60,794 nt of DNA from Macrostomum lignano. Taxonomy: Eukaryota. Shown here piece after piece: positions 2,065 through 27,150 of this stretch (positions within the stretch are counted from its first letter, which is position 1; each line of letters begins with the position of its first letter). The translations under genes and the position numbers were made by a program. The DNA lies in contig NIVC01004096.1 in NCBI GenBank assembly GCA_002269645.1, positions 1 to 60,794 on the forward strand, given 5' to 3'. The notes below the pieces were generated by a model. That model was not told the DNA's origin, did no database searches, and saw only the letters and a program-made list of their open reading frames with translations.

Positions 2065-8167
<6,103 letters not shown>

Positions 8168-9228: not shown

Positions 9229-9655
9229 TCTAGGGTTGGGATGTAATTTGGGATCTAATTTGGGGTCTGGGTTGGGATCTAGGGTTGGGATTTAGTTTGG
9301 GAAATAAGTTGGGATCTGGGTTGGGTGGGAAGAGGGCTGGGATCTGGGTTGGGGGCTGGGATCTGGGTTGGGATCTGGGATCTGGGTTTAGATCTGGGTT
9401 GGGGGCTGGGATCTGGGTTGGGATCTGGGATCTGGGTTTAGATCTGGGTTGGGGGCTGGGATCTGGGTTGAGATCTGGGATCTGGGTTGAGATCTGGGTT
9501 GGGGGCTGGGATCTGGGTTGAGATCTGGGTTGGGGGGCTGGGATCTGTGTTGGGATCCGGGATCTGGGTTGGGATCTGGGTTGGGATCTGGGATCTGGGT
9601 TGAGATCTGGGTTGGGGGCTGGGATCTGGGTTGGGATCTGGGTTGGGATTGGGAT
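9229..9655. repeat. Degenerate GGGATCTGGGTT-type array
   Basis: Direct tandem periodicity. Confidence 0.88.
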
Positions 9656-10252
9656 GGAGTTATCAAGGCAATCTTGAACCGGCACTGTTTCAAGTAGACT
9701 AGTACCTCAAGTAGATGTGAAATTGATATAAAAGCAAAGCGAACGTTGTTTAGGATGCTTTCTATCTTGGCGAAAAGTTGTCTTGTTTCTACAAACATTT
9801 CACACACAAAACTTTCCTAGCCTTCTCTAGTAGAAATTGGCCCCTTCCTTTCCCTGGCGAGTTACAGTTCCAAACTCTGTCCGACTTCCTATTTGCAAAG
9901 TTTCACTTCCTAATCAAGAGGCTCCCTCTCGCCCGGCCGACCCTCTGCATTGCGTCTTGGGACCTCAGTGAGGTCGGAAAGCATACGGTAATTTTATTTA
10001 AGTCTTCAACTTCTTCTTTTCCTGAATTTTATTTGGAAGAAATTTTATGTGGCTGTACGGTAGATCCGATGTTAAAAGAAGTGTGCTAATGCACTTTTGA
10101 GATTATTGTGTGTTTATGCTCAATGAAGTATTGAAATTGGCACTTAAGTTGCTGGCGTGAACGTTGCTATCTGTAGTCAGATTTTCAATGTTTGAATGAG
10201 ATTTAACCTTCAAGAGGTGGATTGATATTCCTATTATAAGAGTTGCTATTAT

Positions 10253-10430
10253 TGGAGTGAGATTTGAAATCTAGAGATGAGATTTGTAATCTGGAGGTGA
10301 GATTTGCAATCCGGAGGTGCTATTTGCAATTTGGAGCTGAGATTTGCAACCTGAAGGCGAGATTTGCATTCTGGAAGTAAGATTCGCGATCTGGAGATGA
10401 GATTTGCAATCTGAAAGTGAGATTTGCAAG
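10253..10430. repeat. Degenerate 20-bp array (GAGATTTGCAATCTGGAGGT)
   Basis: GAGATTTG recurs at 20-nt spacing. Confidence 0.8.
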
Positions 10431-12056
10431 CAAACAAGCGAAAAAGAAATTGGGACCAAAAAAACATGTTGATAAAAGGTTCTATTTTAGCTGCTTCTGT
10501 TTTTGATGAAAAAATTCTTTAGAAAACTTTTGCAATAAAAAATTGCACCTCAATCTATCTGCTGGTTGTTTTTGTCAGATCGAGCAGAAATATCAATTGA
10601 AAATATCAATCAAATTATGGAACTTTCGGAAAATCAGGTTCAGCTCACTATCGCATGACTGAATACCGCTCATGCCGAGTCGGGGTAAAGAACTTTGACG
10701 CAAGGACAAGTCAAAACGGCCATTCTTACACCATTCAGCGTCCCCACTGGCACATTTTTCCAATCTGGCATTACTGCTTTGATTTCATTGAACTAATTAA
10801 AATTTATGACCAAGTTATAGACTCGGCTATTATCCTATATACTAAAAATTCTTATCTGATTGCCAGTTCAACTCCCCTCGCCACGCGTAATCAATGTACA
10901 TCATACTCTCTGCCCAAGTGACCAATCAGTTCACCCACCCTAGCCGCCCAATAGCCGCCCAAAAGTGTGTTAAAATGACCTGAAATGGTGTTAAATTGAT
11001 CGGCGTACTAGGTAAAAATTCTATACAATCTACGTTTGCACCTACTTGTGAACGAATTGCTGATGAAGTACATTGGCCATCAGCACACAACGCTGCGCGT
11101 CAGAGCATGTACGAATGTCCTCAAATTCAAATTTCTGCTGATTCTGCTGAGCGGAATGGTGGAGACTCTCGAGAAATCGGATTTTTCTAGCGCAAATTTG
11201 TCTATGGCCGAAACCCCATTCAGCGCTGTGCGTTCTCTGGAGCATTAGCGATATGGCAAATATAGGTTTCTTAACGGCCTCCAGCTCATTTCTAAGAAAG
11301 TCAAGTGTAGTGTCCTTGTACTTCGGTTGTCAATGGTGCCTACCTTGACTGCATGCTTCCTTAACAACGCCTTCAAAACTATATTGATGTAACCTCAACT
11401 CTCATTCTCGAAACTTGAACTTTACATGAATAAAGCAATACATATCTCAACAATCAACATCCTAGCAGACTACTAATTGGGAAAAATTTGGCTTGAAACA
11501 AAATTCAACTACTTGTTCTATGGTATTACTGTTAGTAGTGAACTTAAAACACAATGTCAAGTATTTTTTCGGCCTGACAGATTTATCTTCTGCAATGTCA
11601 GCCTTGAATTGTCTCGGGCCACCAGATCATGGTATCAGTAGCGTATCAGTAGCCTAATTAGCAGCGATCTAACCTTGGCCCACTCTGCTTAACTTGCAGG
11701 CGCAGCTGCAAACTCGAGACCCTGCTTGCATGTTCTGCGCCGCGCCTTAAAAGAACCTTTTTAACAACCAACAAAATGTTTCAAAATCCCAAGATAGAAT
11801 TAAAAATGAATTGTTTTTTCGCTTCGCCTTTCGCTGGCAAATTGTTGGCAGAATACCGCCAATAAATGGCTCAACCAATCCGGTTTCAGGCAGTGGAAAC
11901 TATTCAACCAGTCCCCAGAACTCAATAAAAGCCAGGGAGTCAGTCCGTTCCCAGCGGCTGCCGCTACTCTCCGAGATTTCAGCTCGACTTAAAAAAAAGA
12001 CTGCCGAAAGCCCTCATTCCAAAGTACAGTTTTGACACCTTTAAGAAGCATCAGCC

Positions 12057-12472
12057 ATGGTCAACCAGACGAAGCTGCTCATCTTTATCATGCTAGTCGT
12101 CGGCCAGCTGGGTAAGTGGATGCTATTGACTTATCATCGCGCTTATAAAATTGATACCTAATTTTTTGTCGAATTGGAATCCTCAGGTCTCAACTCAGCG
12201 GGACCGGTTTCGCGTGAAGGTACGAGTTAATAGCAATTAGCAAAAACTCATAGTCCTTTCAATCGATACCATAATTGATCAATGATGGCGACCTGTTCTC
12301 AAAACCGATGCACACAGTTGCAGACTCTGCTGCTGCTCCGGTAGACGACGTCGACATCGCTTTGTCGGCTGCTGCGGCCAAAATTCGACAACAGTCGCTG
12401 GCTCAGCAGCGGCGCAGAGTCTACGGCAAGCTGATGGAGAGGCTCAGCAAGCGCTTCGTTACGGACTGGTAG
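12057..12472 (+). CDS. Candidate secreted neuropeptide precursor, 78 aa; exons 12057-12111, 12187-12219, 12324-12472
   Basis: GCCATGG Kozak context; hydrophobic signal peptide MVNQTKLLIFIMLVVGQLG; two phase-1 GT-AG introns keep frame; RRR and KR basic sites; AATAAA near 12635. Confidence 0.75.
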
Positions 12473-13229
12473 CAGCACCGATGGGCTGACGATCGAGACA
12501 ATCTAGAATGCAAAAACACGCTGACTTCTGTCCTAACAGCCATGTTTGAGCTTTAGAAATCTACTATCAGCTGTAACTGGTCTGCAGGCTCACCATCGAA
12601 TACTGCTACAGAGTTTTTTGTTCTGTTGTTGAAAAATAAAACAGAGAGTAGTTTACACAGACCATTGTTTGGTCTCCCCCCAACAGCGCAGTGGACGCTT
12701 TTTGGCGCGTGTTCAAACCTGCATTGTCTCGCTTACTTTTTGCTCAACCACCCGTGGCTACGTGTAGGAGTATAGGAACTGCATCTTTGCATTGTATTGC
12801 TGCAGCAATGAGCTACATGTACTGAAAAAATTGAAGAGTTATGCTTTTTCATTCACCCTACTACTGACTAATTCTTAATGAGTACGCGAGCCATCAAATC
12901 TTGGCCAGGACTTCTTTGGTACAAAGTAGCTTGACTATTCGTATTCTTTGGATACAGCTTCTTGACCAACTTTCAACCCGCAATAACCTGCACTCCAGCA
13001 AACCTGGACCACGAATCACTCTTCTCCAGATCCTCATTTTCAGATGCCAGGAGGCGATTGCAGGACGCTGGCCTGCTGCGCGCAGCCTTCACGATCGGCG
13101 GCAAGAGAGTCTGCAATGCGGCACTGCATCACCAAGACGGTTCGGTCTGTCCAAGCGACCTGTTGCGCTGTTAGTGACTCCAGCTGACAGGCCGCACTGC
13201 CCGCAGCCGGTGCAGAACGCGCGGTTGTG

Positions 13230-13565
13230 GACGCTGCAGGCCAGGTTCAGCAGCCTAGGCTCGATTCTTAAATGCAGTCATCACATTAATCTGGGGCTAA
13301 ATTGGAATCTCGGCTTGGCTCTGCTCGTGCAATTAACGCCCTTGAGGGCCAACCCCCAAGGCTCAGTGAAGTGTACATGCCTAACGATAAATAAAGTCAG
13401 GGGCCACTGTACACTCCTGTGTGAGTATATGCCTGCGCGTATGACTGCGTACGTATCCGCGCGCTTGTGTGCCTGCTCAGGGGAGTCGGCGGAATGGGCA
13501 GTAATGCCTCTCGCCGGTTGTGCGACAATGTCGCTTAAAGTGCGACAGGGTGCACACAGTCCCTT
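13230..13565 (+). mobile_element. tRNA-derived SINE, copy 1 (decayed head)
   Basis: About 330 bp aligns by eye to the reverse complement of 42424-42745; GGCTCGATTC B-box-like motif retained. Confidence 0.65.
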
Positions 13566-14691
13566 GACTCTCATAAAAGCCCAACCGAGGCCGAGGACAG
13601 CCGCGGAATCAGCGTTTTGTCAACTGCCTGATGACTGACGCTGGCGTCCCGAATTAGGTGGGCCTGAGAGTGTACATGCGAACAAACTAAATAGTTGGTC
13701 TACATTGAGTGCAAGCGAACGTAAAAATGCAAACGCACAGTCGTAACACTGACTGTCTATATAGTCCGATACTTTATCGAGCAGCCAACTTTTAGTTATG
13801 ACCATATCTACATACCCGGTCTTTCCTCTGGACCTATTAGATTCAAGGATTCCTTAAATAGAGCTGAAAAAGTCTCCGGCCATACAGACAGTCCAAGACT
13901 CCTTCTACTGCATACAGTCGGCAAAAGTAAAGCAATTTTGCCTGTCTAGCTCAGGGAAACACATCGAGCACAGATTTGATTTATCATGCCCCCTTCAAGG
14001 TAATAAAATCAGCCTCCAAGTTGGGCATTACTGACAATCGGACCACTTCTCACAGAGTTTCGTTTGCTTGGGTAAAATCAGCCCCTACCGACTATATTCT
14101 TTTTTAAGGCAAAAAAAATTGCAAAAAAATCGAAAAAAAATATCAGAGTCTCTCATAGCACCATCAAACAAAATTGCTCATTCAATTTATCAACTATTTT
14201 CAGTCCATTTCGATAATTATTTATCATATTTTTCTCCATAGTGGCTGCTTATGGTATTTATTGGAATTTTTTGGTAGATTGGCAATTAAAATTAGCGAAG
14301 CTCAGGAGGACAAAAGATGGCGGCAGTTTTTCGTGCCAAACGCTTTCTGAAATCAATTAAATTTTGAAATCAACGAGCCTTTCAAATAATGAAAAGGCCC
14401 GCCTCAGTTACGCGTAAATTGCGCTTGTTAAAAATGCGCCAGGCGCAACAATTGGAGCTTCCGTAGGGCGTGGCTTGGCCGGCTATTTCTGTCTGTCTCT
14501 CAGGTTAATTGAGCGGGACTAATCTTTTCGGTTAAAATTTATACCTTTTTTGCGATCCAGTTCCCCAAAATTGCAATCCATTTTGCGCGCGGAACTTTCT
14601 GCCTATCCAATATCCCATTATGACCCTGCTTGAGCCATAGACTAATCTCCGAAAACTGCCTCCAAAGTTTGCCCAAGAAGAATTTTCATTT

Positions 14692-14753
14692 AGTGCTTCC
14701 AGCAACAAAGGCAATTAAAACACGAACTTGGCACAGAAACGAAGCAGGCCTCC
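14692..14753 (-). repeat. Terminal repeat B2 (62 bp, identical to B1 at 14986-15047)
   Basis: AGTGCTTCCAGCAAC...GCAGGCCTCC present twice in direct orientation. Confidence 0.95.
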
Positions 14754-14825
14754 GTCAATAAAAAAGTGTTTCGAACTTCAATCTACGAGTATATTTGGCT
14801 TAAAGCAAACTTAACACGAAAAAGA

Positions 14826-15047
14826 AAAAAAATTCACTGCGAGAAGGCAAAGTGAGCCGCCAGTAGAGCGCGACGGGGGTTTAAAAACACCCCTGCCACC
14901 CAAGGGGGGGCAGGCGGCGATGTACAATCAACGCGCTGGGCACTAAAGCCGGTTTGTGCACTTTCGCCGCACAAACCAGTCCATTAGTGCTTCCAGCAAC
15001 AAAGGCAATTAAAACACGAACTTGGCACAGAAACGAAGCAGGCCTCC
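14826..15047 (-). repeat. Internal repeat junction A2 (14826-14985) + B1 (14986-15047)
   Basis: A2 matches A1 apart from homopolymer lengths; B1 matches B2. Confidence 0.95.
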
Positions 15048-15121
15048 AAAGCCAAACACAACGGGGGATAAGAGCAGCAGCTAGGCATTGAGCAAAAAAC
15101 AAATCAGCGGGAAGACCACCG

Positions 15122-16168
15122 TCAAAAATGAGCACTAAGGGCGGAAGAAAAATGCAGAGAGGCCGCAGCAGTGGCAACACCCGAGCGGGGCAAGTAGCGC
15201 TCCACCGCCGAACTCTTCCAGTCGCCGATCCGCTGGATCTCCGCCACCGGCAGGCCCATGCGAGCTGCCCAGGTGGCTCCACCTCGACGCAGGCTGTGAG
15301 CCGAGTAGAGCTTGCCGCCACACCCAGCCCTCTGCAGCTTAGAGTCAAGAAACCGGTCCAAGTCCCGAGCAGCTAGATGGCGCCGCTGTCCATTGCGATC
15401 GATGAAGGACCAGAGTGGCGCCTCGGCCATCGCCAGCTTGTTGACACACAGATGTCGGCGAATCGCCACTACCGGGCAGAGCGCGGGGCAGGCGGGGAAC
15501 TTCGGAAGCAGGACGTGGTGGACTCGATCACGGAACTGAATAGTCTTGCCAAAGTCCACGCTTAAGAGGAGGCCGCAACGGTGAGGTGTCAGATTCTGCA
15601 CCTTCATCCCACTACCCAACTGAGGCGACGATAGAAGGAGTGATGATTTTCGCAGCATTCCCCACCAGGCAGTGATGGTGACCGCCCAGCAGGCCAGTTG
15701 CCGATTGTCGCCCTTGTCAACCAGAGACCAAAGCTTTTGCAGCACCGACGGAGACATTGGTAGCTTCTGGTTGACCTGAAGCCCCAGCGCTCGCTTGCAG
15801 CCCCGCAGCAGATGCTGGGTGAGGGTATGCTTTGTCAGGTCCTGAGCGCCGTTCAGCCGAAACCACAGTGAAAGCGAGCTGACGTGACCGCGAATGCTAC
15901 TGTAGGCTCGCAGGCGCGTGCCCGTGAGGCCAGCCAGGTAGTTTAGCAGCGTGGACACAGTACACCCGGCGGGGTCGAGTCCCTTGGCTGAGCAGTACGC
16001 GCGCCAGGACCGCACGTGTGAGCTGATGGCGCTTTTCGAGCGGGCCGCGTAGGAGGAACCGAGTAGTTCACGGGCTCGGTGGCTGAGGTGGTCTGGCGCA
16101 GTCTGGCGACCTGAAAACGGAGAAAAGCGGATGTGGCAGCAGAAAGCGTGTGCCGGGAAAGCGAGCAA
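15122..16168 (-). CDS. Tyrosine recombinase (YR) ORF of the retrotransposon; probable coding start at splice acceptor 16110
   Basis: GMLRKSSLL (R), FGKT (K), AHSLRRGGAT (HxxR), GDWKS (W), ERYL (Y); N-terminal helical region ARELLGSSYA...WRAYC; overlaps the RH frame; track start is TTG. Confidence 0.93.
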   Translation of the reverse strand: MLAFPAHAFCCHIRFSPFSGRQTAPDHLSHRARELLGSSYAARSKSAISSHVRSWRAYCSAKGLDPAGCTVSTLLNYLAGLTGTRLRAYSSIRGHVSSLSLWFRLNGAQDLTKHTLTQHLLRGCKRALGLQVNQKLPMSPSVLQKLWSLVDKGDNRQLACWAVTITAWWGMLRKSSLLLSSPQLGSGMKVQNLTPHRCGLLLSVDFGKTIQFRDRVHHVLLPKFPACPALCPVVAIRRHLCVNKLAMAEAPLWSFIDRNGQRRHLAARDLDRFLDSKLQRAGCGGKLYSAHSLRRGGATWAARMGLPVAEIQRIGDWKSSAVERYLPRSGVATAAASLHFSSALSAHF

Positions 16169-17761
16169 TTGGTGAGACGCATCAATGAGCCATAAAAGCG
16201 CAGCAAAAAATTCAACAACTGACTGCCCTCGTGCAGCCGAGACGCGGCGTCAGCAAAAATTTGAAACGGCCCTGGCACATGGTAAGCACGCAGCTGAATG
16301 TTCTGACGAATGCAAAGCAGCGCCACCGTCTGCAACAGCCTCAACACCAGAGGGCACTTGGAGACCCCATTGTTGATAATACAGCACGCTGCCATATTAT
16401 CGCAGTAGATGCACAGCCGACAGTTGTGCAGGCGGTCCCGCCACGACAGCAACGCCATCAGAGGTATCGCAGCCTCCTTGTAATTGATAGGCAGATCCCG
16501 AAAACAGCATCCGCGTCGAGATCCCAATTAACGTAGCGCCAGTCACTCACGCCCCCGGCAACCGCAGCACGGCAGCGCCGCCCACCAGGCAGGCGTCCGA
16601 CTCGATCGCGGCATCGAAGTCGCCATTGAACCAGAGAGTCTTCCACCTTTGAGCTAGCAGAGCACACTTCCACCAGCGCAGCTGACTACGCAGGGCCGCA
16701 TCCACCTCATCTTGCTGACCGACGGCCAAATTGTTAGAGCGCGAAATCAGGTCCTGAAGAAAGGGGCGACCGCATTCGATCACCTGCGAAGCCCACACCA
16801 GCCTGCCGATGATCTGCTGTAAACTTTGCTTGCTGATGCGATCCTTGGCAGCAGCATCGTCCAGTTGCTCTAAAAGTTTCTCCACTTTCTCGTCTGAAAG
16901 CCGCTTCAGGCCCTTGACGGTGTCGAGCTCCACACCGAGAAACGTCATCCTTTGCGAAGGCCGCTGACACTTCGTCCAATTCACGGTGAAGCCCAGTCTG
17001 GTCATCAGCGACGTCAACACATTAAAGAAGGCCTCGCACTCGTTTTGCAAACCGCAAAAGGCAAAATCGTCCAGATAGGCCTCAGTATTGACGAAGCCGC
17101 GGTGCACCATCATCAACTTGACCGCCTCGCTGAGATGATAGAAAGCCGTGACGGAAGCAGCAGCACCAAATGGCAGGCGCGTGTCCACCATGTAGGTGTC
17201 GCAAGCATCGCTACCTAGCCGAAACTTCAAACCGGTAAACTTTTGGTCGTCAGGATGGATCCCACATGAACGATAGGCTTCGCTTAGATCGACCTTGCAC
17301 ATAAAGTAATTCTTCTTAAGCCTCTTAGCAAAGTTCTGGACACAGGTGAAACGCAGTCTCTGCTCGCTCTCGTAAGCGGAGTTGACAGACTTCCCTTGCG
17401 GCCGGCTGCAGTCATGGATTAAGCGAACGCCACCGTTGGACTTCGGCAGCGCACCAAGGGCGCTGACTATGCGAGGTTTGTCACCAGCAGCACAGAGACG
17501 ATAACGACCGAGACGAAGCTCATTAGCAATCTGACGCGCAACTCTGTCATGGTGCTTAAAAACCGATGAGTAGTTTGCCACTTCAACCAGCTCGTTGCCA
17601 TGCATCTGACGATTGGTGATGCGAAAGCCACTAGCAACGCCATCAAGGATAAAAGCCATCCGACCGGGCGGGAGATCCAGCTTGGACAACTCCGCCTGCC
17701 ACTGGGCCAGATTGAGATCAGAGGATAAAACAGGAGGAATAAAATTCGCGCTATGATCGAG
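15943..17761 (-). CDS. Reverse transcriptase + RNase H, interrupted by two 1-nt homopolymer shortfalls at 16552-16556 and 16501-16504
   Basis: RLIHDCS, KVDLSEAY, RLPFG, YLDD, TFLGVELDT, ESDAC, PINYKE, YCDN, HVPG...ADAASR. Confidence 0.93.
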
Positions 17762-18823
17762 TCAGTGTTGCGGTTTCTCCTCACCGCTCGATTCGTCGCG
17801 GTGGAAGGCTGCCTCAGAGTGCGCCAGGCCGCATCTTCGGCAGCGATGCAGGAACCGACAGCTCTTGCGTTCGCACCCGCGTATCCTGTTGTAGTCGAAG
17901 CAAACCAGTTGATTGCGCTTCTGGGCACCACCCCCCGATTGCTGCTTCTGGGGAGCCATGAGGTACGCCGCAACCAGACTCAGGTCCGAGCTGTGCGACT
18001 CCCACTTGCCATCAGACGTTTGGCTGAGCCGGCACTCGTCATCAAATCTCATCACACGGCTCTTGTCGAAGCCCAGGTCCAACAACTCGCCAATGCGTGC
18101 GGTGTACCTGAGATAGTCTCTGAGCTCTGCCACATCCAATCGACCATGCTGATCCAGTCTGACTAGACGCCCGTCAGTCAGCATCTGAAGCATCGCCTGC
18201 GCATTGCCCGTCACCCAATCGCCTAACGACAGCGCCTCGACCGCCACTTCTTTAGACTTACTCTGGCCTAGAAGACACTGCTTGCGCTTGCTGACGAAGT
18301 CAACGATTCGGTAGACGCTACTGGTACTTCTCCCTGAGGCTCCCATGTTCTCATGCTGCTGCCCAACTTCATGCTGCACACATCCAGTTAGGCAATTTAG
18401 CAACTCACCCGGTACATCACGTGCCTCAGAACGGCCGACCCGTAGCTGCGCGAACTCGGATTCCAGCTGCGCTTCTTCTTTGCGCAGCTTCAGCAGACGG
18501 ATTCGCTTCTCCGCCTCCAGCAGCTGTTCGTCCAGGCCGCCAGCCGCGCCAGACCCACCGTTCTCGACCTGTCGCCGATTTGGGGGGCTGCCCCCGCTGC
18601 TCGCTACCGCCGAGTTCTGCCCTGTAGCTCGCAGAATGGCCTGAACGTTCGTCAGCTCGTCACTCTCGACAGAGGTCTCCACGTCTTGAATATGGGCGCG
18701 AAGCCTTTGGACTAGTTTTGCTTTGTTGCCAGAGGTTGGCAAACCAAGCTCCTTTAGTTTCCCTCGCAGTGCTGGCACAGTTGTGGGGACGGAATCGGCT
18801 GACTGGCTACGGGTGCGGTTCAT
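17762..18823 (-). CDS. Gag-like ORF1 (353 aa): N-terminal SAP domain, coiled coil, C-terminal CCCH/CxxC zinc finger
   Basis: TVPALRGKLKELGLPTSGNKAKLVQRL fits the SAP consensus; CFDYNRIRGCERKSCRFLHRCRRCGLAH resembles Ngaro-type Gag fingers. Confidence 0.85.
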   Translation of the reverse strand: MNRTRSQSADSVPTTVPALRGKLKELGLPTSGNKAKLVQRLRAHIQDVETSVESDELTNVQAILRATGQNSAVASSGGSPPNRRQVENGGSGAAGGLDEQLLEAEKRIRLLKLRKEEAQLESEFAQLRVGRSEARDVPGELLNCLTGCVQHEVGQQHENMGASGRSTSSVYRIVDFVSKRKQCLLGQSKSKEVAVEALSLGDWVTGNAQAMLQMLTDGRLVRLDQHGRLDVAELRDYLRYTARIGELLDLGFDKSRVMRFDDECRLSQTSDGKWESHSSDLSLVAAYLMAPQKQQSGGGAQKRNQLVCFDYNRIRGCERKSCRFLHRCRRCGLAHSEAAFHRDESSGEEKPQH

Positions 18824-18852
18824 GACTCAGCAAAAGTTTCTATTTCTAAGTC

Positions 18853-19014
18853 AAAAAAATTCACTGCGAGAAGGCAAAGTGAGCCGCCAGTAGAGCGCGA
18901 CGGGGGTTTAAAAACACCCCTGCCACCCAAGGGGGGGGGCAGGCGGCGATGTACAATCAACGCGCTGGGCACTAAAGCCGGTTTGTGCACTTTCGCCGCA
19001 CAAACCAGTCCATT
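18853..19014 (-). repeat. Terminal repeat A1 (about 160 bp)
   Basis: Direct copy of 14826-14985. Confidence 0.95.
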
Positions 19015-19479
19015 TGAATCAATTCAATAGTGGATGTATTGAATAATATCAGTGAGCAACGAACCAAGGACCACTGTAGTATAAGTGGGCATAAAACTTA
19101 ACATGTAACTTTTGGAGGTCAATTTCTTAGAAAAAACACACTTTGGAGATAGCAAAACATCATTTTTAAGCATATAATCAGTGATTGCATTTAATTTGAG
19201 GCAGTTAAAGATTGCGATTCAGATAATCTAGCGAGCACAACATGTTACTCTGTTGTAATTTACATATAGATAGCCGTGTAGTGAAAGTTTCATTTTCATA
19301 TTGTTTTCTTTTTATTTTATAAACCCAAAGTTGTAAATAATCACAACTGGCGTTAGCTGAACTTTTTGTTGTGTTACTTTTTTTAATCAAGTGTATTTAT
19401 TGTTAAAATCGTTGCATGCAGGTACTCAAAAGCCATAATTGTAGGCATAATTCTATTTCAACACTTATTAGTTCCTACA

Positions 19480-20700
19480 TACATTACACATTTCCATTTT
19501 TCATTTCCTCTAGCAAGGACTTCCCCTGGGGTTGAGCAAGACGGGGCTCTTTGCAACACCTGTCGCATGCTTTGACATGATGCTGGTCCTCGCCTCTTAT
19601 CGTCATCTTGGAAACAGGTGGGTCCATGATGTAATCCTGTACAGAGTTGATTTCAAAAGCCACTGTCTCAGATCTCCTTGATGCGCATCGTGACAGTGCA
19701 TCTGGTATTGGGATTTCGTGTGACAGCTTATGAACATGGCTTATCTTTGCAGTCGTGCAGCTGTGATGGTACATGTATAAGATGATTTTTAGATGGATGG
19801 AAAATGTGCATTAGAGGTTTGTTGTCAGTCACCAGCTGAAAATTTCTTCCTCAAATAAATTTATGCAGCTGACATCATCTTGGTAGCTGAGAAAATTGGG
19901 GTAGTCCGATTTAACCATTGGTTGGAAGTTCGCCAACTGTTTTGCTTCGAATGGCAAGCTGTTGTAACGAAAAGTCCAAACAATTGTCGAGAGTGTGTTC
20001 ATTTCAACCCTGAGCCATGCAATTCTTTTACAATATGTGTCTTCAATAAATGGAGTTGTCGACACCATGCTTTGAAATTTAGGGTTAAACTGATATTTAA
20101 TCTTTCATTTTCCTTGCGGATTACCGCTATTAGTGTCGTATAAAACACTTACAATCCACTGAATTCCTTCTTTTACCAAACGATGTATCCCGTCCGTATG
20201 AAATCGTTCGGGGCCTCAGGAAAACTACAAACTTCTGGTATCTTCAGATCCAATTAAGGAGAAAATGGCATTCATCCAGATGCGGCCCATGATCTGTGAC
20301 CCTGCTTCTGCACTGCAGGAGTTGAACTTTAAAGTCTTCTTTGCACACTAGGAACATCCGCCCCAGTATCGAAGGTCATTAAAATCTGGTTTCCCACAAC
20401 AGTAGAGTATCTAGAACAGGACGGCTTGCTTGCAGTAAAAATGTAATGCTCAGAGACTTTTCCTGGGTCTGTGACACCTCCTATAAGAAGATGAACTTTC
20501 AGCTCTGGCCTCTTTTGCCAGGGCATTGCTCAAAATGCTGTTGTGCTTTCTAAACGACTTTTTGCAAAAAATGCTATTTTGCACAATGCTGAATCGCGTT
20601 TGGCCATAGAAAAATTACATCGGGAAATTCGAGCTAGAAATAAAGTTTCCATTGGAGAACAGAATTCAACCGGTACGACGACTCTACAAGAGAAATTATT
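19480..20700 (-). pseudogene. Decayed Ty3/Gypsy pol remnant (protease-RT-RNase H), fragmented by stops, frameshifts and deletions
   Basis: FDTGAD (aspartic protease), IMGRIWM (LLGRDWL-like), FRYNSLPF...FQ and SYQDD (RT), IPDALSR (RNase H end), in PR-RT-RH order. Confidence 0.75.
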
Positions 20701-21972
20701 TGAAGAATATTCAATTGACGCTACTAAGTAAAACCAGTAGAAGATAGTGAACATGACAATATTCATCGAATTAATAACAAGGGAGGGGCTGGCCAGCTTG
20801 CCACGAGGGAGAAAACTGAAACCGGAACGTTCGGACTCGGCTGAGGCTTGACAGAGAGGTGAGGATGAAGGAGCGGAGGCTGGAGGAGGGGGGAGGGCAT
20901 CGCCTCTGAGGCGATCTAGTTCTAACTTGATCTTCTCTCTCCTTCTCTCTCTTCCGTCATCCTCATCACGGCGCCTCCTCTCCGCGGTGCTCAGCAGCCT
21001 CTCTCTCGCAGGTCTTCCCTTCATCCCCGCAGTTCCCCTGCCCACGCAGGTTGCTCTCCTTCCGTCTGGGAAAGCTCCCGTGTGGCATGGCCGGGGCTAC
21101 TCAAAAGTCCGCAGCCCCTGGGGAGCAGTGCTCATTGAATGCGAGGGAGAGATTTCAGATGAGGCGGCGGGGGAAGTCGGACGGCCATCGATCGATCTGC
21201 GCAAGCAGGGAAGAGAGTAGAGGAAGAACGGAGGCAGGAGTACAAACTGTTTCTGTTGCCCTCCCCTCGGGCGCGCTCGCTCCTCTTGCATCTATCTATC
21301 CGTATCTCTCGCTCCCTCGCCTCCCTAATCCAAATATCCCAGTCCCAGCTCCCAATGGGAGAAGGAATAGTAAGGAGGGAGAGAAAACGGGCAAGCGAGC
21401 GGCAAACGTTTGTACCACCTCGAGGCGTTTGCGGCGAGTGAGTGCGAGAGAAAGGCATCGAGACGGAATCCCGTCTACCTCCTGCTGTGGTAGCCCCAGC
21501 TCCAGCCCCCCCCCCACCCAAATAGGAGGCAACGAAGACTCTTTTTGGTAAAGGGTAAGAAACATGAAGGATGCTGAACGGAGAGGAAGAAATGAGGCTT
21601 AGAGCGAGAAAGAGAGGGATGCGGTACGGATTGAGGTCGGGCGAAGTTGCGTGCGCAGGTCGCGGGGGGAAACTATTTCGCGTCCGGCCCCGGTTCTCAT
21701 CGGATCGCATCTCTGCGGCTGGCCCAGCCCTGTTCTCCGCCACTGCACTCCTCGCCCATTCCCCCCTCCCTCGGAGGCTGACCCCTCCTCTTCCTCCGCT
21801 GCCGCCGCCTAGCCTCAAAGCACTGACGCCGCACAGGCCCTCTATAAAGAGTTCAGAAAACAGCACACTTAGACGCTGATAGAGGTGAAAAGTGTCTTTC
21901 AAAGGACGCAAATAATACGCCAAAGAAACATTTTGAGCAGGTAATTTCAGGTGCCTACAAAGCAGCAAAACA

Positions 21973-22645
21973 ATGGCCGGTTTCATCGCCAAACAGCTTG
22001 TTGGCAAGCAGATGGATAGCGTCAAAAAGATGGGCGGCGAGGAAGCCAATCCGGAGGACACCGAGAAGCAGGCCGAGGAGGCGGCCGCCATCGCCGAGGC
22101 TCTGGCTGAAGAGAAACGAAAACGCGACGAGAAGCATCAGAAAATGGAGGCGGAGCGCGAGGAACTGCGGCAGGGAATTCGCGACAAGGTGAGCGGAACA
22201 TCGCGTACCTGTTCAGGTTAATGAGAAATCGGTTAAGGAGTCTGAATCGAAGTACCGGGGTCATATTAGACTGGGAATCTTCATTACGAGCGTAACGCCA
22301 TCACCCCACTGAAGTTTCTGGAGGCTCTGGTAGTAATTAAGCGTGGTAACCCCTTAACCTAGCAAAGTTCGAGCTATTGCGAATAAACGAACGAATGCCT
22401 CATCGTGACTTCAGTACAACATCCAGAAGAAGGAGGAGGAGTTCAACTTCGGCGAAATGGACGACGGCAAAGGGGTCGGCAGGAAACGCAAAACCCCGGA
22501 AGAGCTCGCCGCCGAGCGCGACCTCGAAGAGAAGGAGGATTTTGCCTCCTTCCTGCCCGAGGGCGTCCGGGACACTGTGCGCAACGTCACCGCCGTGCCC
22601 CAGAAGATGATCTCCGACGCGCAGGAGAAGTGCGTCATTCAGTAG
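21973..22645 (+). CDS. cpx: Complexin (synaphin), 148 aa; exons 21973-22188, 22415-22645; C-terminal CAAX (CVIQ)
   Basis: MAGFIAKQLVGKQM N-terminus, EAEREELRQGIRDK|YNIQKK SNARE-binding helix, phase-0 GT-AG intron. Confidence 0.96.
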
Positions 22646-24707
22646 GGAGATACTCTCTGGCTCTCTACTAATTTCTTTTGATAAACTGACGCATTCTGTT
22701 TGCTATTTTTTGACAAGTTTTCCCACCGGGTGAAATAGGGCCAGTGAGGGAATCATTGTTTTGTTCGTTGATAGATTGCACGATCGATATAGTAAAGTAC
22801 ACGGACTTGCACATTGGGGTATGGAATCTATTTTTAGACGAGAACGTTTGGATCGATAAGAATAATATGGGGTGGCGGTTCAGCCGGGGTTAAGAAGAGC
22901 TAACAGTGTACAGGCTCTCTAAACGATGTACAGCTAAGTACATGAGAACGCGAGACCACCGATCGATAAACGCGAGACCACCGGCTTATTCTCACTCTGG
23001 TCCCGCGTCTAGCAGCTAGCTAATTAGATCAGTTTGCCTTGCCCCCGTCAATGCACTACGATGTTTTTCATTTAGTTTAGTAGTTGTTCTATAATTGCAA
23101 TAGCTGCTGTTTGTTGCTTAATGGACACGTTGGTGGCCCCATCTCTGCAGTGGCTTTGCAGCACTCAAGCACTAGCATCAGAACTCCCCAGCTCCCAATA
23201 TTCGGCAAGGATTAATAAATTAGGCACAAATCCATGTGGCAGTATATGCAATAAAACTATTCATATATTTATATACAATGAACTTCTTGTTTTCACTACC
23301 TTAGCTTAGGTAAAAATGAAAGCGAATATTGTATATTTTAATTATGTTTCACTGTTGCATAGTGGATATCAATCATCGTTGCATAATACTAGACTTTTAT
23401 TTCTACATTTTTATTAACCGTTTTTATTCAACTTTGCCCAGTCTATGTAGAATATGGTCAGTACGTGAATATCGCAGTAATTATTTATATTATTAGATGT
23501 TCCTTTTTTACTAGTGTACCTCGTAGTCATTCAAACAAATTGTTTTGATATTTTTTTCTGTACGGTTTTTTTTGCTGGCTAATAGCAGCGGGGCATCCAG
23601 CACTGTCACTCTGCTTACGTCTAACAAAGAATTTATAAGTGAATCCTCATCCGCTTCTTCACAGCGCAGAGCTAGATAGATCCCTTGATCTGTCATTTTA
23701 TGTCGCAGCAATTGTCAGTTTAAGACAGTTTGCAAAGGTGCAATTTGACGTTTTGCCTAATATATATTCCATTCCGTTGTATAAGTCGATGCACTGGCAC
23801 TAATTATGACTTAGAACCTTTAACTCATCTCTGCGCGAGTATCGTTTCGCTTGTTAATTTGAATTGGCGCCAAAATACGCCTTGTCGTTCCTTTTGGCGC
23901 GAATTCAAATTGAAAACAATTGATTGTCGAGCTAAGAAATTAAAAAACATACCGATTTTAGATATATAAGTAACTTTTCCAATTCCGGGTCTTGTTATTT
24001 CTGCTTACATTTTTATCTTCTCTGCAAAATGTTGACTCAGAGCAAGCAATTGCTTCGATATTTTCAACATGACGCTGATTTCTTACAACGAATTTGTTAA
24101 TAACCATATCGGTCTATACACGTAGTTCATTAGTTTCAAGGTAATTTATGCTTGTATTTTTGTTAATTTGTTTACTTAATACTGAACAATATTCCGATTT
24201 CGTTATCGCTATAGTTCGACCACTACTACCCCGTACCAGCCACTCGATGAAGGTGAGGACCGGTTGGGCTCATTATCCAAGCACCATTTATTAGATTAAC
24301 CGAGCACCATAAATTACATAATTAAAAAAGCATATTATATAAATACTTATAAGTAAATAAAACATTAAAATTGCTTTAGCTAGTGATGATGCTTTGCTGT
24401 CATATTCAATGCATTACTATTTTACATTATATCTGTGCACTTATTTATGCTCGTAGTTGTATTATTTAACGAGTGAAGATATAAATTTGTGCAGATGAAG
24501 ACTTAGGAAGCGTTGGAGAGACGAAATGTTATCTCGTTTGTCACAAAAGCATAATAAATAAAATATATGCTATCCACACGAGTACTCAATTCCGACATTT
24601 CGGAATTAAAAGCAAAACTTACGTTTGCTTTTCTTTAATCACCTTCATCTGCTCATTGGCGCTAAAATGCATTGATGACTCCCTTACTTCGCTTGAAGAC
24701 ACCCTGC

Positions 24708-25803
24708 TACCCCGATGACACCCTGCTGCCCCCGATGGTACCCTGCTGCCCCCTGCCCCCGATGGCACCCTGCTGCCCCCGATGGCACCCTGCTGCCCCC
24801 GATGGCACCCTGCTGCCCCCGATGGCACCCTGCTGCCCCGATGACACCCTGCTACCCCGATGACACCCTGCTACCCGATGACACCCTGCTGCCCCCGATG
24901 GCACCCTGCTGCTGCCCCCGATGGCACCCTGCTGCCCCCGATGGCACCCTGCTGCCCCCGATGGCACCCTGCTGCCCCCGATGGCACCCTGCTGCCCCCG
25001 ATGGCACCCTGCTGCCCCCAATGACACCCTGTTACCCCCGATAACACCCTGCTACCCTTGATGACACCCTGCTACCCCCTGATGACACCTTGCTATCCCC
25101 GATGAGACCCTGCTGCCCCCTGCCCCCGATGGCACCCTGCTGCCCCCGATGGCACCCTGCTGCCCCCGATGGCACCCTGCTGCCCCGATGACACCCTGCT
25201 ACTTCCGATGACCCCCTGCTGCCCCCGATGGCACCCTGCTGCCCCCGGTGGCACCCTGCTGCCCCCTGCCACCGATGACACCCTGCTGCCCCCGATGGTA
25301 CCCTGCTGCCCCCTGCCCCCGATGGCACCCTGCTGCCCCCGATGGCACCTTGCTGCCCCCGATGGCACCCTGCTGCCCCCGATGGCACCCTGCTGCCCCC
25401 GATGGCACCCTGCTGCCCCCGATGGCACCCTGCTGCCCCCGATGGCACCCTGCTGCCCCCCCCGATGGCACCCTGCTGCCCCCGATGGCACCCTGCTGCC
25501 CCCGATGGCACCCTGCTGCCCCCAATGACACCCTGTTACCCCCGATAACACCCTGCTACCCTTGATGACACCCTGCTACCCCCTGATGACACCTTGCTAT
25601 CCCCGATGAGACCCTGTTACCCCCGATGACACCCTGCTACCCCGATGACACCCTGCTACCCCTGATGACACCCTGCTACCCCCGATGACACCCTGCTACC
25701 CCCGATGGCACCCTGCTACCCCTAAGACATCCTGCTACCCCTGATGACACCCTGCTACCCCCGATGACACCCTGCTACCTCCGATGACACCCTACTACCC
25801 CTG
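24708..25803. repeat. 20-bp minisatellite (GATGGCACCCTGCTGCCCCC)
   Basis: Direct tandem periodicity. Confidence 0.95.
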
Positions 25804-26469
25804 AAGAAACCCTTCTATTCAGGGAGAAACCTATGTTAAAAATATTACACTTTAGTAGAAGGCATGAGGGGGCTTTTGGGACAAAATTGAAGCTTTAAAA
25901 TCTGATTAATACGAGTACCTTATATTAATTCTTAATCCATCATATATGGCTGCCTATAACGAAACTGCAGTTGAGAAAGCTTTTAAGAAAAACCATTTCC
26001 AACAACATTCTCATTAGACTGTCCACATTTCATCGAATCCTCATTCTTGTACAGAAATTCGGTATTCAATCTCTTCTTGCTCACATTTGTTCACCATGTC
26101 AGCCAAGAGTCTGCAGCCGCCCACGCATCGAACCGGCTTTCTTTAATGTGTCGTTCGAGATTAGCTCACGAGTTTGTTTAGACCCAGAATTACAAGAAAG
26201 AAGTGCAGAGGCCCGCATCTGCTATCTAATAGAAATGAAATTGATCAATTTTTGCCGGAACTGCAACTCGAATTGCACACTGATCTGCTGGCAACGGCTC
26301 ATGATGGCCAGGCTGCACTTTAGTGCCTTTGACCCTCAGTTCATCGCGTCACTTTGACAGAGGAAAGTTTCGATCCTCTAGATTCATCACAGATCTATTA
26401 TTTATGCCTATGGCCCACACATTATTCTCTTAAGGCGTCCTCCGCCTCCCGCTTCGGCACTTTTCACTT

Positions 26470-27150
26470 CGGCACCACATGGACACTACAGACCCACATA
26501 GACACTACTGACGCACTTCAACACTACTGGCCCACATAGACACTACTGACCCACATATACACTACTGACCCATATAGACACTACTGACGCACTTCAACAC
26601 TACTGACCCACATTGACACTACTGACCCACATAGACACTACTGACCCACATAGAAACTACTGACCCACATAGACACTACTGAACCACATAGACACTACTG
26701 ACCCACTTCAACACTACTGACCCACTTCAACCCACTGACCCACATAGACACTACTGACCCACATAGACACTACTGACCCATATAGACACTACTGACACAC
26801 TTCAACACTACTGACCCACATAGACACTACTGACCCACATAGACACTACTGACCCACTTCAACCCTACTGTACCCACATAGACACTACTGACCCACCTCA
26901 ACCCTACTGTACCCACATAGACACTACTGACCCACATAGACACTACTGACCCACCTCAACCCTACTGACCCACATAGACACTACTGACCCACCTCAACCC
27001 TACTGTACCCACATAGACACTACTGACCCACATAGACACTACTGACCCACCTCAACCCTACTGACCCACATAGACACTACTGACCCACATAGACACTACT
27101 GACCCACATAGACACTACTGACCCACTTCAACCCTACTGACCCACTTACT
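26470..27150. repeat. 19-bp minisatellite (CACTACTGACCCACATAGA)
   Basis: Direct tandem periodicity. Confidence 0.95.

What the first reader, a model, noticed from the sequence alone, without database searches (positions are those of the whole stretch)
15122..18823. Predicted spliced SAP-Gag/tyrosine-recombinase fusion integrase in a Ngaro-like retrotransposon
Seen: the YR frame opens after a TGA at 16252 and has no ATG before its conserved N-terminal helices; its first ATG (QKLPM) lies well inside the protein. Just ahead of those helices is a strong acceptor, CCGCTTTTCTCCGTTTTCAG|GT CGC (exon starts 16110, phase 1). Inside gag, codon 138 is followed by a consensus donor, CCG G|GTGAGT (intron starts 18408, phase 1). 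Joining them removes the Gag zinc finger and all of RT/RH and gives an uninterrupted 467-aa protein, SAP domain + coiled coil + YR (…ARDVP-G-RQTAPDHL…). Known: SAP is a DNA-binding module, and YR integrates the circular DIRS-order intermediate. Inference: the element makes a chromatin-tethered integrase by alternative splicing. I know of no description of this, but cannot check the literature here.
Basis: partly seen in the sequence, partly recalled or inferred. Interest (0 to 1): 0.88.

Follow-up and report, generated by a model that had tools for sequence, protein, structure and literature searches.

The report
Spliced Gag-recombinase fusion in Ngaro retrotransposon
A flatworm jumping gene of the Ngaro type very probably makes its integration enzyme from a spliced message that joins the front of its coat-like protein to the recombinase, and the same splice sites recur in related elements from flatworms to amphioxus, which would explain how this enzyme gets made although its reading frame has no usable start codon.

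Summary
On the minus strand lies a 4.3-kb Ngaro-type tyrosine-recombinase (YR) retrotransposon (19014..14690) in a Macrostomum lignano-like genome. The donor CGG|GTGAGT (18409|18408) scores best of 165 GTs, and the acceptor TTTTCAG|GT (16111|16110) best of 194 AGs. Joining them gives an open 467-aa SAP, coiled-coil and Cre-like YR protein.

Comparison with relatives supports real splicing:
- The best donor in gag is phase 1 in 24 of 25 related gag ORFs, against 19 of 49 in RT controls.
- The encoded residues at the donor vary (G-E, G-K, S-K) while GTRAG is kept.
- The best acceptor before the YR core is phase 1 in 23 of 25 loci.
- The RH-to-YR frame relation varies (-1, +1, 0), which argues against a conserved frameshift.
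- Four RefSeq models (amphioxus twice, a hemichordate, a limpet) and a M. lignano UniProt model show the same two-exon fusion. In the four RefSeq loci the intron holds RT/RH.

No transcript data for this copy could be examined. The chromatin-tethering role of SAP is untested, and SAP is absent from distant relatives. I found no description of this splicing in the papers I could read, but the founding Ngaro papers were not available. Verdict: probably real, and a new variant of a known strategy (retroelement subgenomic splicing).

The parts
14690..19014 (-). Whole Ngaro-type YR retrotransposon (about 4.3 kb)
   Evidence: GC-rich island (0.53-0.60) in AT-richer flanks; split direct repeats at both ends; gag, RT, RH and YR between them.
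18853..19014 (-). Split direct repeat A1 (5' end of the element)
   Evidence: Identical to 14826-14985 except for a 2-nt length difference in a poly-G run.
14984..15047 (-). Split direct repeat B1, abutting A2
   Evidence: 64 nt, 100% identical to B2 at 14690-14753.
14826..14985 (-). Split direct repeat A2
   Evidence: Copy of A1.
14690..14753 (-). Split direct repeat B2 (3' end); a 72-nt unique spacer separates it from A2
17762..18823 (-). gag ORF (353 aa): SAP, coiled coil, conserved core, C-terminal Cys/His zinc-finger-like motif; ends in UGA
   Evidence: 43-52% identical to gag of L002-L005.
18689..18781 (-). SAP domain (aa 15-45)
   Evidence: Pfam PF02037, E 1.8e-11, above the gathering score; helix-loop-helix in the AF2 model.
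18434..18538 (-). Long helix / predicted coiled coil (aa 96-130), the last folded unit of exon 1
   Evidence: AF2 helix H96-130, pLDDT 83-86; conserved in relatives.
18409..18823 (-). Exon 1 coding part: gag ATG to the first base of codon 139
18403..18411 (-). Splice donor CGG|GTGAGT, phase 1
   Evidence: Rank 1 of 165 GTs. A G|GTGAG(T/C) in the same phase and linker position occurs in all 5 close relatives. The top gag donor is phase 1 in 24/25 ORFs.
16111..18408 (-). Predicted 2298-nt intron: gag core and zinc finger, gag stop, RT, and most of the RNase H reading frame (its last ~55 codons, 16110-15946, overlap exon 2)
   Evidence: Intron length is 2203-2369 nt in 10 relatives and 2248-3291 nt in RefSeq models.
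16111..16130 (-). Polypyrimidine tract and acceptor CCGCTTTTCTCCGTTTTCAG|
   Evidence: Rank 1 of 194 AGs. Conserved with the same position and phase in L001 and L002 and in 23/25 loci.
15122..16110 (-). Exon 2 coding part: complete two-domain Cre-like tyrosine recombinase (fusion aa 139-467) plus stop
   Evidence: Foldseek to Cre: E 1e-11, target-normalised TM 0.73-0.77 over about 320 columns. R292, K327, H410 and R413 are invariant; W436 and Y444 nearly so. Phage integrases align from about aa 141-150.
16550..17761 (-). Reverse transcriptase, in frame with gag after the UGA
   Evidence: Pfam RVT_1, E 5.9e-12; 51-56% identical to L002-L004.
15946..16527 (-). RNase H reading frame as far as it is open in this copy; its N-terminus (about 16600-16490) lies in two other frames because of 1-nt breaks at 16556-16552 and 16504-16501
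17762..17764 (-). gag stop UGA (context UGA CUC), followed in frame by RT: candidate readthrough site
   Evidence: The same in-frame arrangement occurs in 11 of 23 relatives.
16204..16210 (-). U UUU UUG heptamer in the RH frame inside the RH/YR overlap (relevant only to the frameshift rival)
   Evidence: Present in L002 but broken in L001.
15755..15757 (-). First ATG of the YR frame (fusion residue 257), downstream of the whole core-binding domain
   Evidence: helices H149-247 precede it in the AF2 model.

Best explanation
The element is a young Ngaro-type tyrosine-recombinase retrotransposon in a Macrostomum lignano-like flatworm genome.

Its full-length transcript has two fates. Unspliced, it encodes Gag (353 aa). 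By inference it also encodes Gag-RT/RH through readthrough of the in-frame UGA, and it serves as the template for reverse transcription. A fraction is cis-spliced from a phase-1 donor in gag codon 139 to a phase-1 acceptor about ten codons before the first helix of the recombinase. This removes the Gag core, the zinc finger, RT and most of RNase H.

The spliced mRNA uses the gag AUG. It yields a 467-aa protein made of a SAP domain, a coiled-coil helix, a flexible linker and a complete Cre-like recombinase. This explains how a YR frame without its own start codon is translated.

The splice is an old, conserved feature of this Ngaro clade in bilaterian animals. The N-terminal module shared by Gag and YR most likely brings the recombinase to the Gag/cDNA complex, working like a Gag-Pol fusion. 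In this family it may also bring it to DNA or chromatin through SAP.

Shown here: the sites, their phase, the open fusion, their conservation, and the agreement with outside gene models. Inferred: actual use of the sites in this copy, the readthrough, and the role of the shared module.
For: (1) The sites exist and are the top-ranked donor and acceptor of the element interior. They match the M. lignano consensus.

(2) Donor conservation acts at the nucleotide level rather than the protein level.
- All 5 close relatives (43-52% aa identity) have G|GTGAG in phase 1 in an otherwise unalignable linker.
- Overall GGT is used for only 26% of Gly codons.
- In more distant relatives the codon pair changes (GGT GAG, GGT AAG, AGT AAG, giving G-E, G-K, S-K) while GTRAG stays.
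- The top gag donor is phase 1 in 24/25 ORFs with median 5.5 bits. In RT controls it is phase 1 in 19/49 with median 3.4 bits.

(3) The acceptor (Y-tract plus CAG|G) sits at the homologous position in phase 1 in 23/25 loci.

(4) In 10 contigs carrying both sites, the donor is rank 1 of 112-170 GTs. The acceptor is rank 1 (once rank 2) of 155-220 AGs. Every fusion is open (437-555 aa where complete).

(5) The RH-to-YR frame relation varies: -1 in 13 loci, +1 in 10, 0 in 2. Muszewska et al. 2013 note the same variability (PMC3783388).

(6) 10 of 25 loci have no ATG between the upstream stop and the YR core.

(7) RefSeq models XP_078682739 and XP_035659582 (amphioxus), XP_077986280 (Glandiceps) and XP_050388701 (Patella) are two-exon genes. 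Exon 1 is the N-terminal part of a longer gag-like ORF, the intron holds RT/RH, and both sites are phase 1.

(8) M. lignano A0A1I8J2F9 reads SAP, coiled coil and YR contiguously, and aligns to the fusion across the junction (query 23-375).

(9) In the AF2 model the junction (residues 138/139) lies in a disordered linker (130-144). The Cre-like fold starts at residue 149. The first internal Met (257) would delete the whole core-binding domain.
Against: - No transcript, junction read or peptide for this element or family was available.
- The exact fusion protein is not in the 15-billion-protein collection. Neither is the plain gag protein, so this absence says nothing either way.
- The splice scores come from a hand-made generic matrix.
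- The related loci are not phylogenetically independent, and most come from metagenome contigs of unknown hosts.
- I could not check whether RNA-seq supports the RefSeq models.
- The M. lignano UniProt models may be ab initio. One of them (A0A1I8G0Z6) uses the same acceptor but an implausible donor inside RT.
- The acceptor lies in the RH/YR overlap, where nucleotide conservation is expected anyway.
- No branch-point-like CTRAY motif was found in the 60 nt before the acceptor, and no AATAAA in the element.
- This copy has two frame breaks in RNase H.
Confidence: 0.75

Rival explanations
1. Programmed -1 ribosomal frameshifting in the RH/YR overlap makes a RT-RH-YR polyprotein. The splice-like motifs are incidental.
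For: RH and YR frames overlap by about 300 nt, and YR is at -1 relative to RH in this family. A U UUU UUG heptamer lies in the RH zero frame at 16210-16204, and L002 keeps it. The literature describes the YR ORF only as 'frameshifted and overlapping' (PMC3783388).
Against: The heptamer is broken in L001. Across relatives the RH-to-YR relation is -1 in 13, +1 in 10 and 0 in 2 loci, and two loci have no overlap at all. The splice phases, by contrast, are constant. YR production would need two successive recoding events (gag UGA readthrough, then a frameshift). Frameshifting explains neither the phase-1 GTRAG kept in gag nor the outside two-exon models.
Confidence: 0.07
2. YR is translated on its own, from an internal promoter or subgenomic RNA, starting at a non-AUG codon or at the internal AUG (15757).
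For: A TTG at 16168 opens a 348-aa ORF. Near-cognate codons exist upstream of the core. Some relatives have ATGs in the overlap region.
Against: No ATG lies before the core-binding domain here or in 10/25 relatives. Where ATGs occur their position is not conserved. Starting at Met257 removes helices 149-247, the whole core-binding domain of a Cre-like enzyme. In many loci the YR frame opens only about 20-60 nt before the acceptor.
Confidence: 0.06
3. The acceptor at 16110 is used for spliced-leader trans-splicing, which is common in M. lignano. This would give an SL-YR mRNA without the gag exon.
For: About 30% of M. lignano genes are SL trans-spliced at [T/C]TNCAG acceptors, and TTTTCAG fits that motif (PMC8629364).
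Against: The published 35-nt SL ends in ...TTGCATG. Joined to 16110, that AUG reads the RH-frame tail, not YR. The YR frame through the SL has no AUG (my reading of the SL sequence quoted). The rule quoted in that paper says trans-splicing prevails when no upstream cis donor exists, and here a strong conserved one does. The same architecture occurs in amphioxus, a hemichordate and a limpet, with cis models.
Confidence: 0.05
4. Nothing functional: chance splice-like motifs in a decaying copy, plus gene-prediction artefacts elsewhere.
For: A single GTGAGT in 1 kb and one good acceptor are not rare by themselves. This copy has two frame breaks in RH. Ab initio predictors do stitch ORFs together (P0016).
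Against: Position, rank and phase are conserved in about 25 diverged loci, against RT controls. The amino acids at the donor change while GTRAG persists. The terminal repeats of this copy are identical apart from a homopolymer length.
Confidence: 0.04

Closest known systems
Ngaro retrotransposons (DIRS order; described by Goodwin & Poulter 2004, cited from memory; summarised in PMC7192593, PMC2632668, PMC3783388, PMC13465315)
   Same: Split direct repeats A1...B1-A2-B2; gag-like ORF1, RT/RH and a tyrosine recombinase in that order; no protease, DDE integrase or methyltransferase; YR ORF overlapping or out of frame with RT/RH.
   Different: The papers I could read describe three separate ORFs and give no route for YR translation. 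Here YR is read as exon 2 of a spliced Gag-N-terminus/YR fusion, and ORF1 carries a SAP domain.
Spliced subgenomic mRNAs of retroviruses and LTR retroelements (from established knowledge: avian leukosis virus env mRNA keeps the gag AUG and its first codons; foamy-virus Pol comes from a spliced mRNA; Drosophila copia and barley BARE splice to set the Gag:Pol ratio)
   Same: One genomic transcript; the unspliced form is both mRNA for Gag and template for reverse transcription; a donor near or inside gag joins to an acceptor before a downstream gene, which borrows the gag start codon.
   Different: Here the downstream gene is the recombinase, not env or pol. The exon borrowed from gag is 108-312 codons long and includes a folded domain plus, in this family, a coiled coil. 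The element has no LTRs and no protease.
Gag-Pol fusions made by frameshift or readthrough
   Same: An enzyme receives the Gag N-terminus, which can bring it into Gag assemblies at a sub-stoichiometric ratio.
   Different: The fusion is made by RNA splicing, and it skips the Gag core and RT/RH instead of extending Gag.
LAP2alpha and ZNF451 isoforms, domesticated DIRS1-like gag joined to host exons by alternative splicing (PMC4495291)
   Same: Alternative splicing combines a gag-derived module of a YR retrotransposon with other protein modules.
   Different: That is a host gene that captured gag. It is not the element's own expression strategy, and no recombinase is involved.

Membership tests
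Ngaro retrotransposons (DIRS order) | Split direct repeats in the order A1 - coding region - B1 - A2 - B2, with A1=A2 and B1=B2 | tested here: met
   A1 18853-19014 = A2 14826-14985; B1 14984-15047 = B2 14690-14753; B1 abuts A2. A 72-nt spacer lies between A2 and B2.
Ngaro retrotransposons (DIRS order) | Encodes RT/RNase H plus a tyrosine recombinase instead of a DDE integrase, in the order gag, RT/RH, YR | tested here: met
   RVT_1 E 5.9e-12. RH is recognised by homology to relatives, with the DEDD-type motifs visible. The YR has a Cre-like fold.
Ngaro retrotransposons (DIRS order) | No methyltransferase domain (unlike DIRS/PAT), no protease, no inverted terminal repeats or internal complementary region | tested here: met
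   Pfam finds no other domain. No inverted repeats in 12000-22000. A 4.3-kb element leaves no room for a further ORF.
Ngaro retrotransposons (DIRS order) | RT and YR group phylogenetically with reference Ngaro elements | not tested
   No reference Ngaro sequences (Repbase) were available. Relatives are unnamed metagenome contigs and RefSeq loci with the same gene order.
Tyrosine recombinase (Cre / XerD / lambda Int superfamily) | Catalytic set R...K...H-x-x-R...H/W...Y | tested here: met
   R292, K327, H410 and R413 are invariant; W436 and Y444 are at least 90% conserved in the alignment with 10 homologues.
Tyrosine recombinase (Cre / XerD / lambda Int superfamily) | Two-domain fold: helical core-binding domain plus catalytic domain | tested here: met
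   AF2 pLDDT is mostly above 80 from residue 149. Foldseek top hits are Cre, E 1e-11, TM 0.73-0.77 normalised to Cre. By sequence alone the Pfam Phage_integrase match is below the gathering score (24.4 vs 27.1 bits).
SAP domain proteins | About 35-residue helix-extended loop-helix motif matching PF02037 | tested here: met
   E 1.8e-11, 43.8 bits against a cut-off of 23.9. DNA or chromatin binding was not tested.
Retroelement genes expressed from a spliced subgenomic mRNA | Consensus donor and acceptor in compatible phase that give an open downstream reading frame | tested here: met
Retroelement genes expressed from a spliced subgenomic mRNA | Splice sites conserved in related elements beyond what coding constraints explain | tested here: met
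Retroelement genes expressed from a spliced subgenomic mRNA | Spliced RNA actually observed (junction reads, cDNA, protein) | not testable with these tools
   No RNA data were available. The only proxies are RefSeq and UniProt gene models with this structure, whose read support could not be inspected.

The most novel reading that the evidence does not exclude
All bilaterian Ngaro-type elements of this clade carry one ancient, phase-conserved intron. Through it the N-terminal module of Gag (SAP plus coiled coil here, other small helical domains elsewhere) is shared between the structural protein and the recombinase. This makes a splicing-generated 'Gag-YR' that co-assembles with Gag on the cDNA and, in the SAP families, docks it on chromatin. 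The splice ratio would then set the Gag:YR stoichiometry. Spliced RNAs that keep both terminal repeats could also be copied in trans into intron-less SAP-YR mini-elements.
Probability: 0.35. Interest if true: 0.75.

Novelty: new variant of a known kind. Interest (0 to 1): 0.66.

Why it matters
How DIRS-order elements express their recombinase has been left open. Papers describe the YR ORF only as overlapping or frameshifted, and it often lacks a start codon.

A conserved splice that fuses the Gag N-terminus to the recombinase would settle this for the Ngaro clade. It would add YR retrotransposons to the retroelements that use subgenomic splicing. It would show an intron kept in phase in a mobile element from flatworms to chordates.

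It would also correct annotation. The multi-copy 'uncharacterized protein' and 'integrase/recombinase xerD homolog' RefSeq genes seen here (one amphioxus model has five identical loci) are the element's own spliced product, not host genes.

It gives a direct handle for experiments in M. lignano, a transgenic model: donor or acceptor mutants, and SAP deletion.

Tried and rejected
- Exact look-up of the gag protein, the 467-aa fusion and the Met257-start YR in the 15-billion-protein collection. None is present, so this says nothing either way.
- The word-indexed protein search with the fusion found only YR-only hits. The exhaustive HMMER search was needed to find the fused models.
- A second copy in the window was sought and not found.
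- Rfam on the whole window found no hits, so no SL RNA or other marker.
- The IMG/VR scan returned only phage integrases, aligning from about residue 141-150.
- Frameshifting was considered and set aside because the RH-to-YR frame relation varies among relatives.
- SL trans-splicing was set aside on reading-frame grounds (one search read).
- 'Conserved Gly-Glu peptide' as the reason for GGTGAG was rejected, because Gly codon usage (26% GGT) and the G-E/G-K/S-K changes at a constant GTRAG argue otherwise.
- Literature: 9 full-text searches and 11 papers read found no description of natural splicing in DIRS or Ngaro elements. Goodwin & Poulter 2004 and Poulter & Butler 2015 are not held, so prior mention cannot be excluded.


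Full report
**1. What is in the sequence**

On the minus strand, 19014..14690 is a GC-rich island of 4.3 kb (GC 0.53-0.60) in AT-richer DNA. It is bounded by split direct repeats:
- A1 18853-19014 equals A2 14826-14985, apart from the length of a poly-G run.
- B1 14984-15047 equals B2 14690-14753, and B1 abuts A2.

Between the repeats lie four coding regions:
- A 353-aa gag ORF (18823..17762) with a Pfam SAP domain at aa 15-45 (E 1.8e-11) and a C-terminal Cys/His motif.
- A reverse transcriptase (RVT_1, E 5.9e-12).
- An RNase H.
- A tyrosine recombinase (YR) frame open from 16249 to 15125.

This is the Ngaro architecture. The near-identical repeats indicate a young insertion.

The host is Macrostomum lignano or something very close to it. 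The neighbouring intron-less doublecortin-domain ORF (32493-38165, minus strand) is 97% identical to BOX15_Mlig027318g1.

**2.

- The joined CDS is open and encodes 467 aa. The intron is 2298 nt.
- The YR frame has no ATG before 15757, which is codon 165.
- With a simple generic weight matrix, the donor is the best of 165 GTs between the gag ATG and the acceptor (6.2 bits; next 4.1). The acceptor is the best of 194 AGs (8.6 bits; next 4.8).
- Both match the motifs published for M. lignano cis-splicing: GT[G/A]AG and CAG (PMC8629364).

In this copy gag, RT and YR share a frame only because the start of RNase H has two 1-nt frame breaks, at a G-run (16556-16552) and a T-run (16504-16501). In the intact relative L002, gag, RT and RH share one frame and YR is at -1. 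The breaks could be mutations or long-read homopolymer errors. They lie inside the proposed intron and do not affect the fusion.

**3. Relatives**

Protein searches found few close relatives. All came from two JGI metagenome samples and share 43-56% identity: L001 (RT-RH-YR), L002 (gag to YR) and L003-L005 (gag).

At the donor, all five gag sequences carry G|GTGAG(T/C) in phase 1, inside a linker that otherwise does not align. GGT makes up only 26% of Gly codons and GAG 76% of Glu codons in these genes. Five out of five GGT-GAG is therefore not expected from a conserved Gly-Glu alone, roughly 0.2^4 given the first.

At the acceptor, window, L001 and L002 all have a pyrimidine tract plus CAG|G at the same column and phase. 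L002 has both sites on one contig, and its fusion is open (...NH-G-RHAKSD...).

**4. Wider comparison**

A metagenome scan with an RT alignment returned 80 more loci (29-44% RT identity). Many carry gag, RT, RH and YR.

- The best acceptor just upstream of the YR core sits at the homologous position, and the exon starts with two bases of a split codon (phase 1), in 23 of 25 scorable loci.
- The best donor anywhere in the gag ORF is phase 1 in 24 of 25 ORFs of at least 250 aa. Median score is 5.5 bits, and in most of them the site lies just before or at the start of the conserved gag core (a few lie elsewhere). In RT coding regions used as a control, the top donor is phase 1 in 19 of 49 with median 3.4 bits.
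- The codon pair at the site changes between lineages (GGT GAG, GGT AAG, AGT AAG, giving Gly-Glu, Gly-Lys, Ser-Lys) while GTRAG is kept. This is the signature of selection on the RNA signal.
- In 10 contigs that hold both sites, the donor is rank 1 of 112-170 GTs. The acceptor is rank 1 (once rank 2) of 155-220 AGs. Introns are 2203-2369 nt. All fusions are open (437-555 aa where the contig is complete).

These loci are not independent samples, and their hosts are unknown. They still span several clearly different sequence lineages.

**5. Independent annotation**

An exhaustive HMMER search of 1.84 billion representative proteins with the fusion returned proteins with N-terminal extensions in front of the YR.

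Two are M. lignano UniProt models:
- A0A1I8J2F9 (344 aa, a fragment) reads SAP, coiled coil and YR contiguously. It aligns to the query from residue 23 to 375, across the junction (...SSQ-G-RSRAPH...). Pfam confirms SAP plus an integrase N-terminal domain.
- A0A1I8G0Z6 joins gag and the start of RT to the YR at the same acceptor. It looks like an ab initio stitch and I give it little weight.

Four are RefSeq Gnomon models: XP_078682739 (amphioxus, with five identical loci), XP_035659582 (Branchiostoma floridae), XP_077986280 (Glandiceps talaboti) and XP_050388701 (Patella vulgata). I fetched their loci (L086-L089).
- Each is a two-exon gene.
- Exon 1 is the first 124-312 codons of a 348-542-codon gag-like ORF.
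- The 2248-3291-nt intron holds the rest of gag, RT and RH.
- Donor and acceptor are both phase 1.
- The acceptor lies about 22-27 residues before the same conserved YR motif as in the window.

I could not inspect the read support of these models. A two-exon model that skips a long RT ORF is not what an ab initio predictor favours, so I infer transcript support.

**6. The protein**

An AlphaFold2 model of the fusion (11-sequence alignment, mean pLDDT 76.8) shows:
- the SAP helix-loop-helix;
- a long helix at 96-130;
- a low-confidence linker at 130-144 that contains the junction (138/139);
- a confident two-domain fold from residue 149.

Foldseek places that fold on Cre recombinase (E 1e-11, TM 0.73-0.77 normalised to Cre, about 320 columns). 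R292, K327, H410 and R413 are invariant, and W436 and Y444 nearly so.

Exon 2 is therefore exactly one complete recombinase. Phage integrases align from residue 141-150 onward. A start at the first internal Met (residue 257) would remove the whole core-binding domain.

**7. Rivals**

- *Frameshifting.* A -1 frameshift from RH is possible on paper. There is a U UUU UUG at 16210-16204 in the RH frame. However, the heptamer is broken in L001. The RH-to-YR frame relation is -1 in 13 loci, +1 in 10 and 0 in 2. [quoted passage not shown] A mechanism tied to one shift direction cannot be the conserved solution, whereas the splice phases are constant.
- *Own start codon.* This is unlikely. 10 of 25 loci have no ATG before the core, and in many loci the YR frame opens only 20-60 nt before the acceptor.
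- *SL trans-splicing.* It is common in M. lignano, but the SL ends in ...GCATG. Joined to 16110, that AUG reads the RH-frame tail, and the YR frame through the SL has no AUG (one search read). The same architecture also exists in animals annotated with cis models.
- *Chance.* This is excluded by the conservation statistics above.

**8. Mechanism proposed**

One promoter in or near A1 gives a genome-length RNA.
- Unspliced, it makes Gag. Through the in-frame UGA (context UGA CUC) it probably also makes Gag-RT/RH. RT follows gag in frame across a single stop in 11 of 23 relatives. This readthrough is inferred, not shown. The unspliced RNA is also the template for cDNA.
- Spliced, it makes the SAP, coiled-coil and YR fusion from the gag AUG.

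The donor is not placed next to the AUG. It sits after a folded N-terminal module and, in most relatives, just before the gag core. The module itself therefore seems to matter.

I consider co-assembly with Gag and the cDNA through the shared coiled coil or N-domain the most likely role. DNA or chromatin docking through SAP is a plausible addition in this family. Distant relatives have a different small helical N-domain that Pfam does not recognise.

**9. Novelty**

Splicing to express downstream genes is standard for retroviruses and several LTR retrotransposons (established knowledge). For DIRS-order or Ngaro elements, the papers I could search and read describe three ORFs and say nothing about splicing. 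The two founding reviews are not in the library. I put about a 20-25% chance on an earlier mention. I therefore rate this a new variant of a known kind.

**10. Limits**

- No RNA or protein data were available.
- The splice scoring is home-made.
- The loci are related and mostly anonymous.
- The evidence behind the gene models was not inspected.
- This particular copy may be defective in RNase H.

None of the steps taken or proposed raises a safety concern. The element's full sequence was never printed, and a temporary working copy of the element region kept in scratch files during searches was deleted.

Noticed in passing
window 17762-17764 (minus strand) and relatives L002, L011-L013, L015, L021, L045, L046, L050, L053, L080: The gag stop (UGA CUC here; UGA CUA or UAG G in relatives) is followed in the same frame by RT with no further stop. 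This suggests Gag-RT/RH is made by stop-codon readthrough in about half of the relatives. The others have RT in another frame.
   Followed up: partly
window 16556-16552 and 16504-16501 (minus strand): Two 1-nt frame breaks in the N-terminus of RNase H, both at homopolymer runs (GGGGG, TTTT). They are either inactivating mutations or long-read assembly errors. The A1/A2 repeats likewise differ only in the length of a poly-G run (18931-18937 vs 14904-14910).
   Followed up: partly
L006, L012, L013, L021, L032, L034, L045 (exon 1 of the predicted fusions); P0056: In more distant relatives the exon-1 module is not SAP. It is another small helical domain of about 60 aa (e.g. ...FEDWAKSVGLNQKTLDLLAKQDL...LKLTMGQSALL...), SAM-like by eye, and unrecognised by Pfam apart from a weak SAM_LFY hit. 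The N-terminal module seems to be swappable between Ngaro families.
   Followed up: partly
window 14754-14825: A 72-nt unique spacer separates repeat A2 from B2. I recall the textbook Ngaro scheme as having them adjacent. No AATAAA or ATTAAA poly(A) signal occurs anywhere in the element.
   Followed up: no
window 32490-38165 (minus strand): An uninterrupted 1891-aa ORF with DCDC1-type doublecortin, ubiquitin-like and Cep120-like domains. It is 97% identical over 60% of its length to a 1175-aa M. lignano protein (BOX15_Mlig027318g1), so the deposited model may be truncated, or this may be a paralogue or homeologue.
   Followed up: partly
window 1048-1830, 2385-3900, 4109-4650, 5051-5980, 6922-7580, 9296-9690, 10239-10450, 24690-25800, 26416-27200, 27599-29240, 29760-30900, 43645-44200, 49904-51000, 51499-52320, 52931-53630, 54370-54565: The window is packed with minisatellite arrays (periods 8-35 nt). 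Most of the other long 'ORFs' (e.g. 2125-4074, 5271-5981, 6922-7578, 50024-50974) are translations of these arrays. Their Pfam hits (extensin-like, PQQAQ repeat) are low-complexity artefacts.
   Followed up: partly
window 13270-13562 and 42425-42714: Two segments of about 290 nt, 92-94% complementary and 29 kb apart, in inverted orientation. These are probably two copies of another repeat family. The first lies in a GC-rich island (12.9-13.6 kb) with a 245-aa ORF without Pfam hits. A similar GC-rich island with a 319-aa ORF lies at 21.0-22.5 kb.
   Followed up: no
P0016 (M. lignano UniProt A0A1I8G0Z6) and RefSeq loci L086-L089: Public annotations list the spliced Ngaro product as host genes ('SAP domain-containing protein', 'integrase/recombinase xerD homolog', 'uncharacterized protein'). 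One amphioxus protein has five identical loci. These are transposon products, not single-copy host genes.
   Followed up: partly
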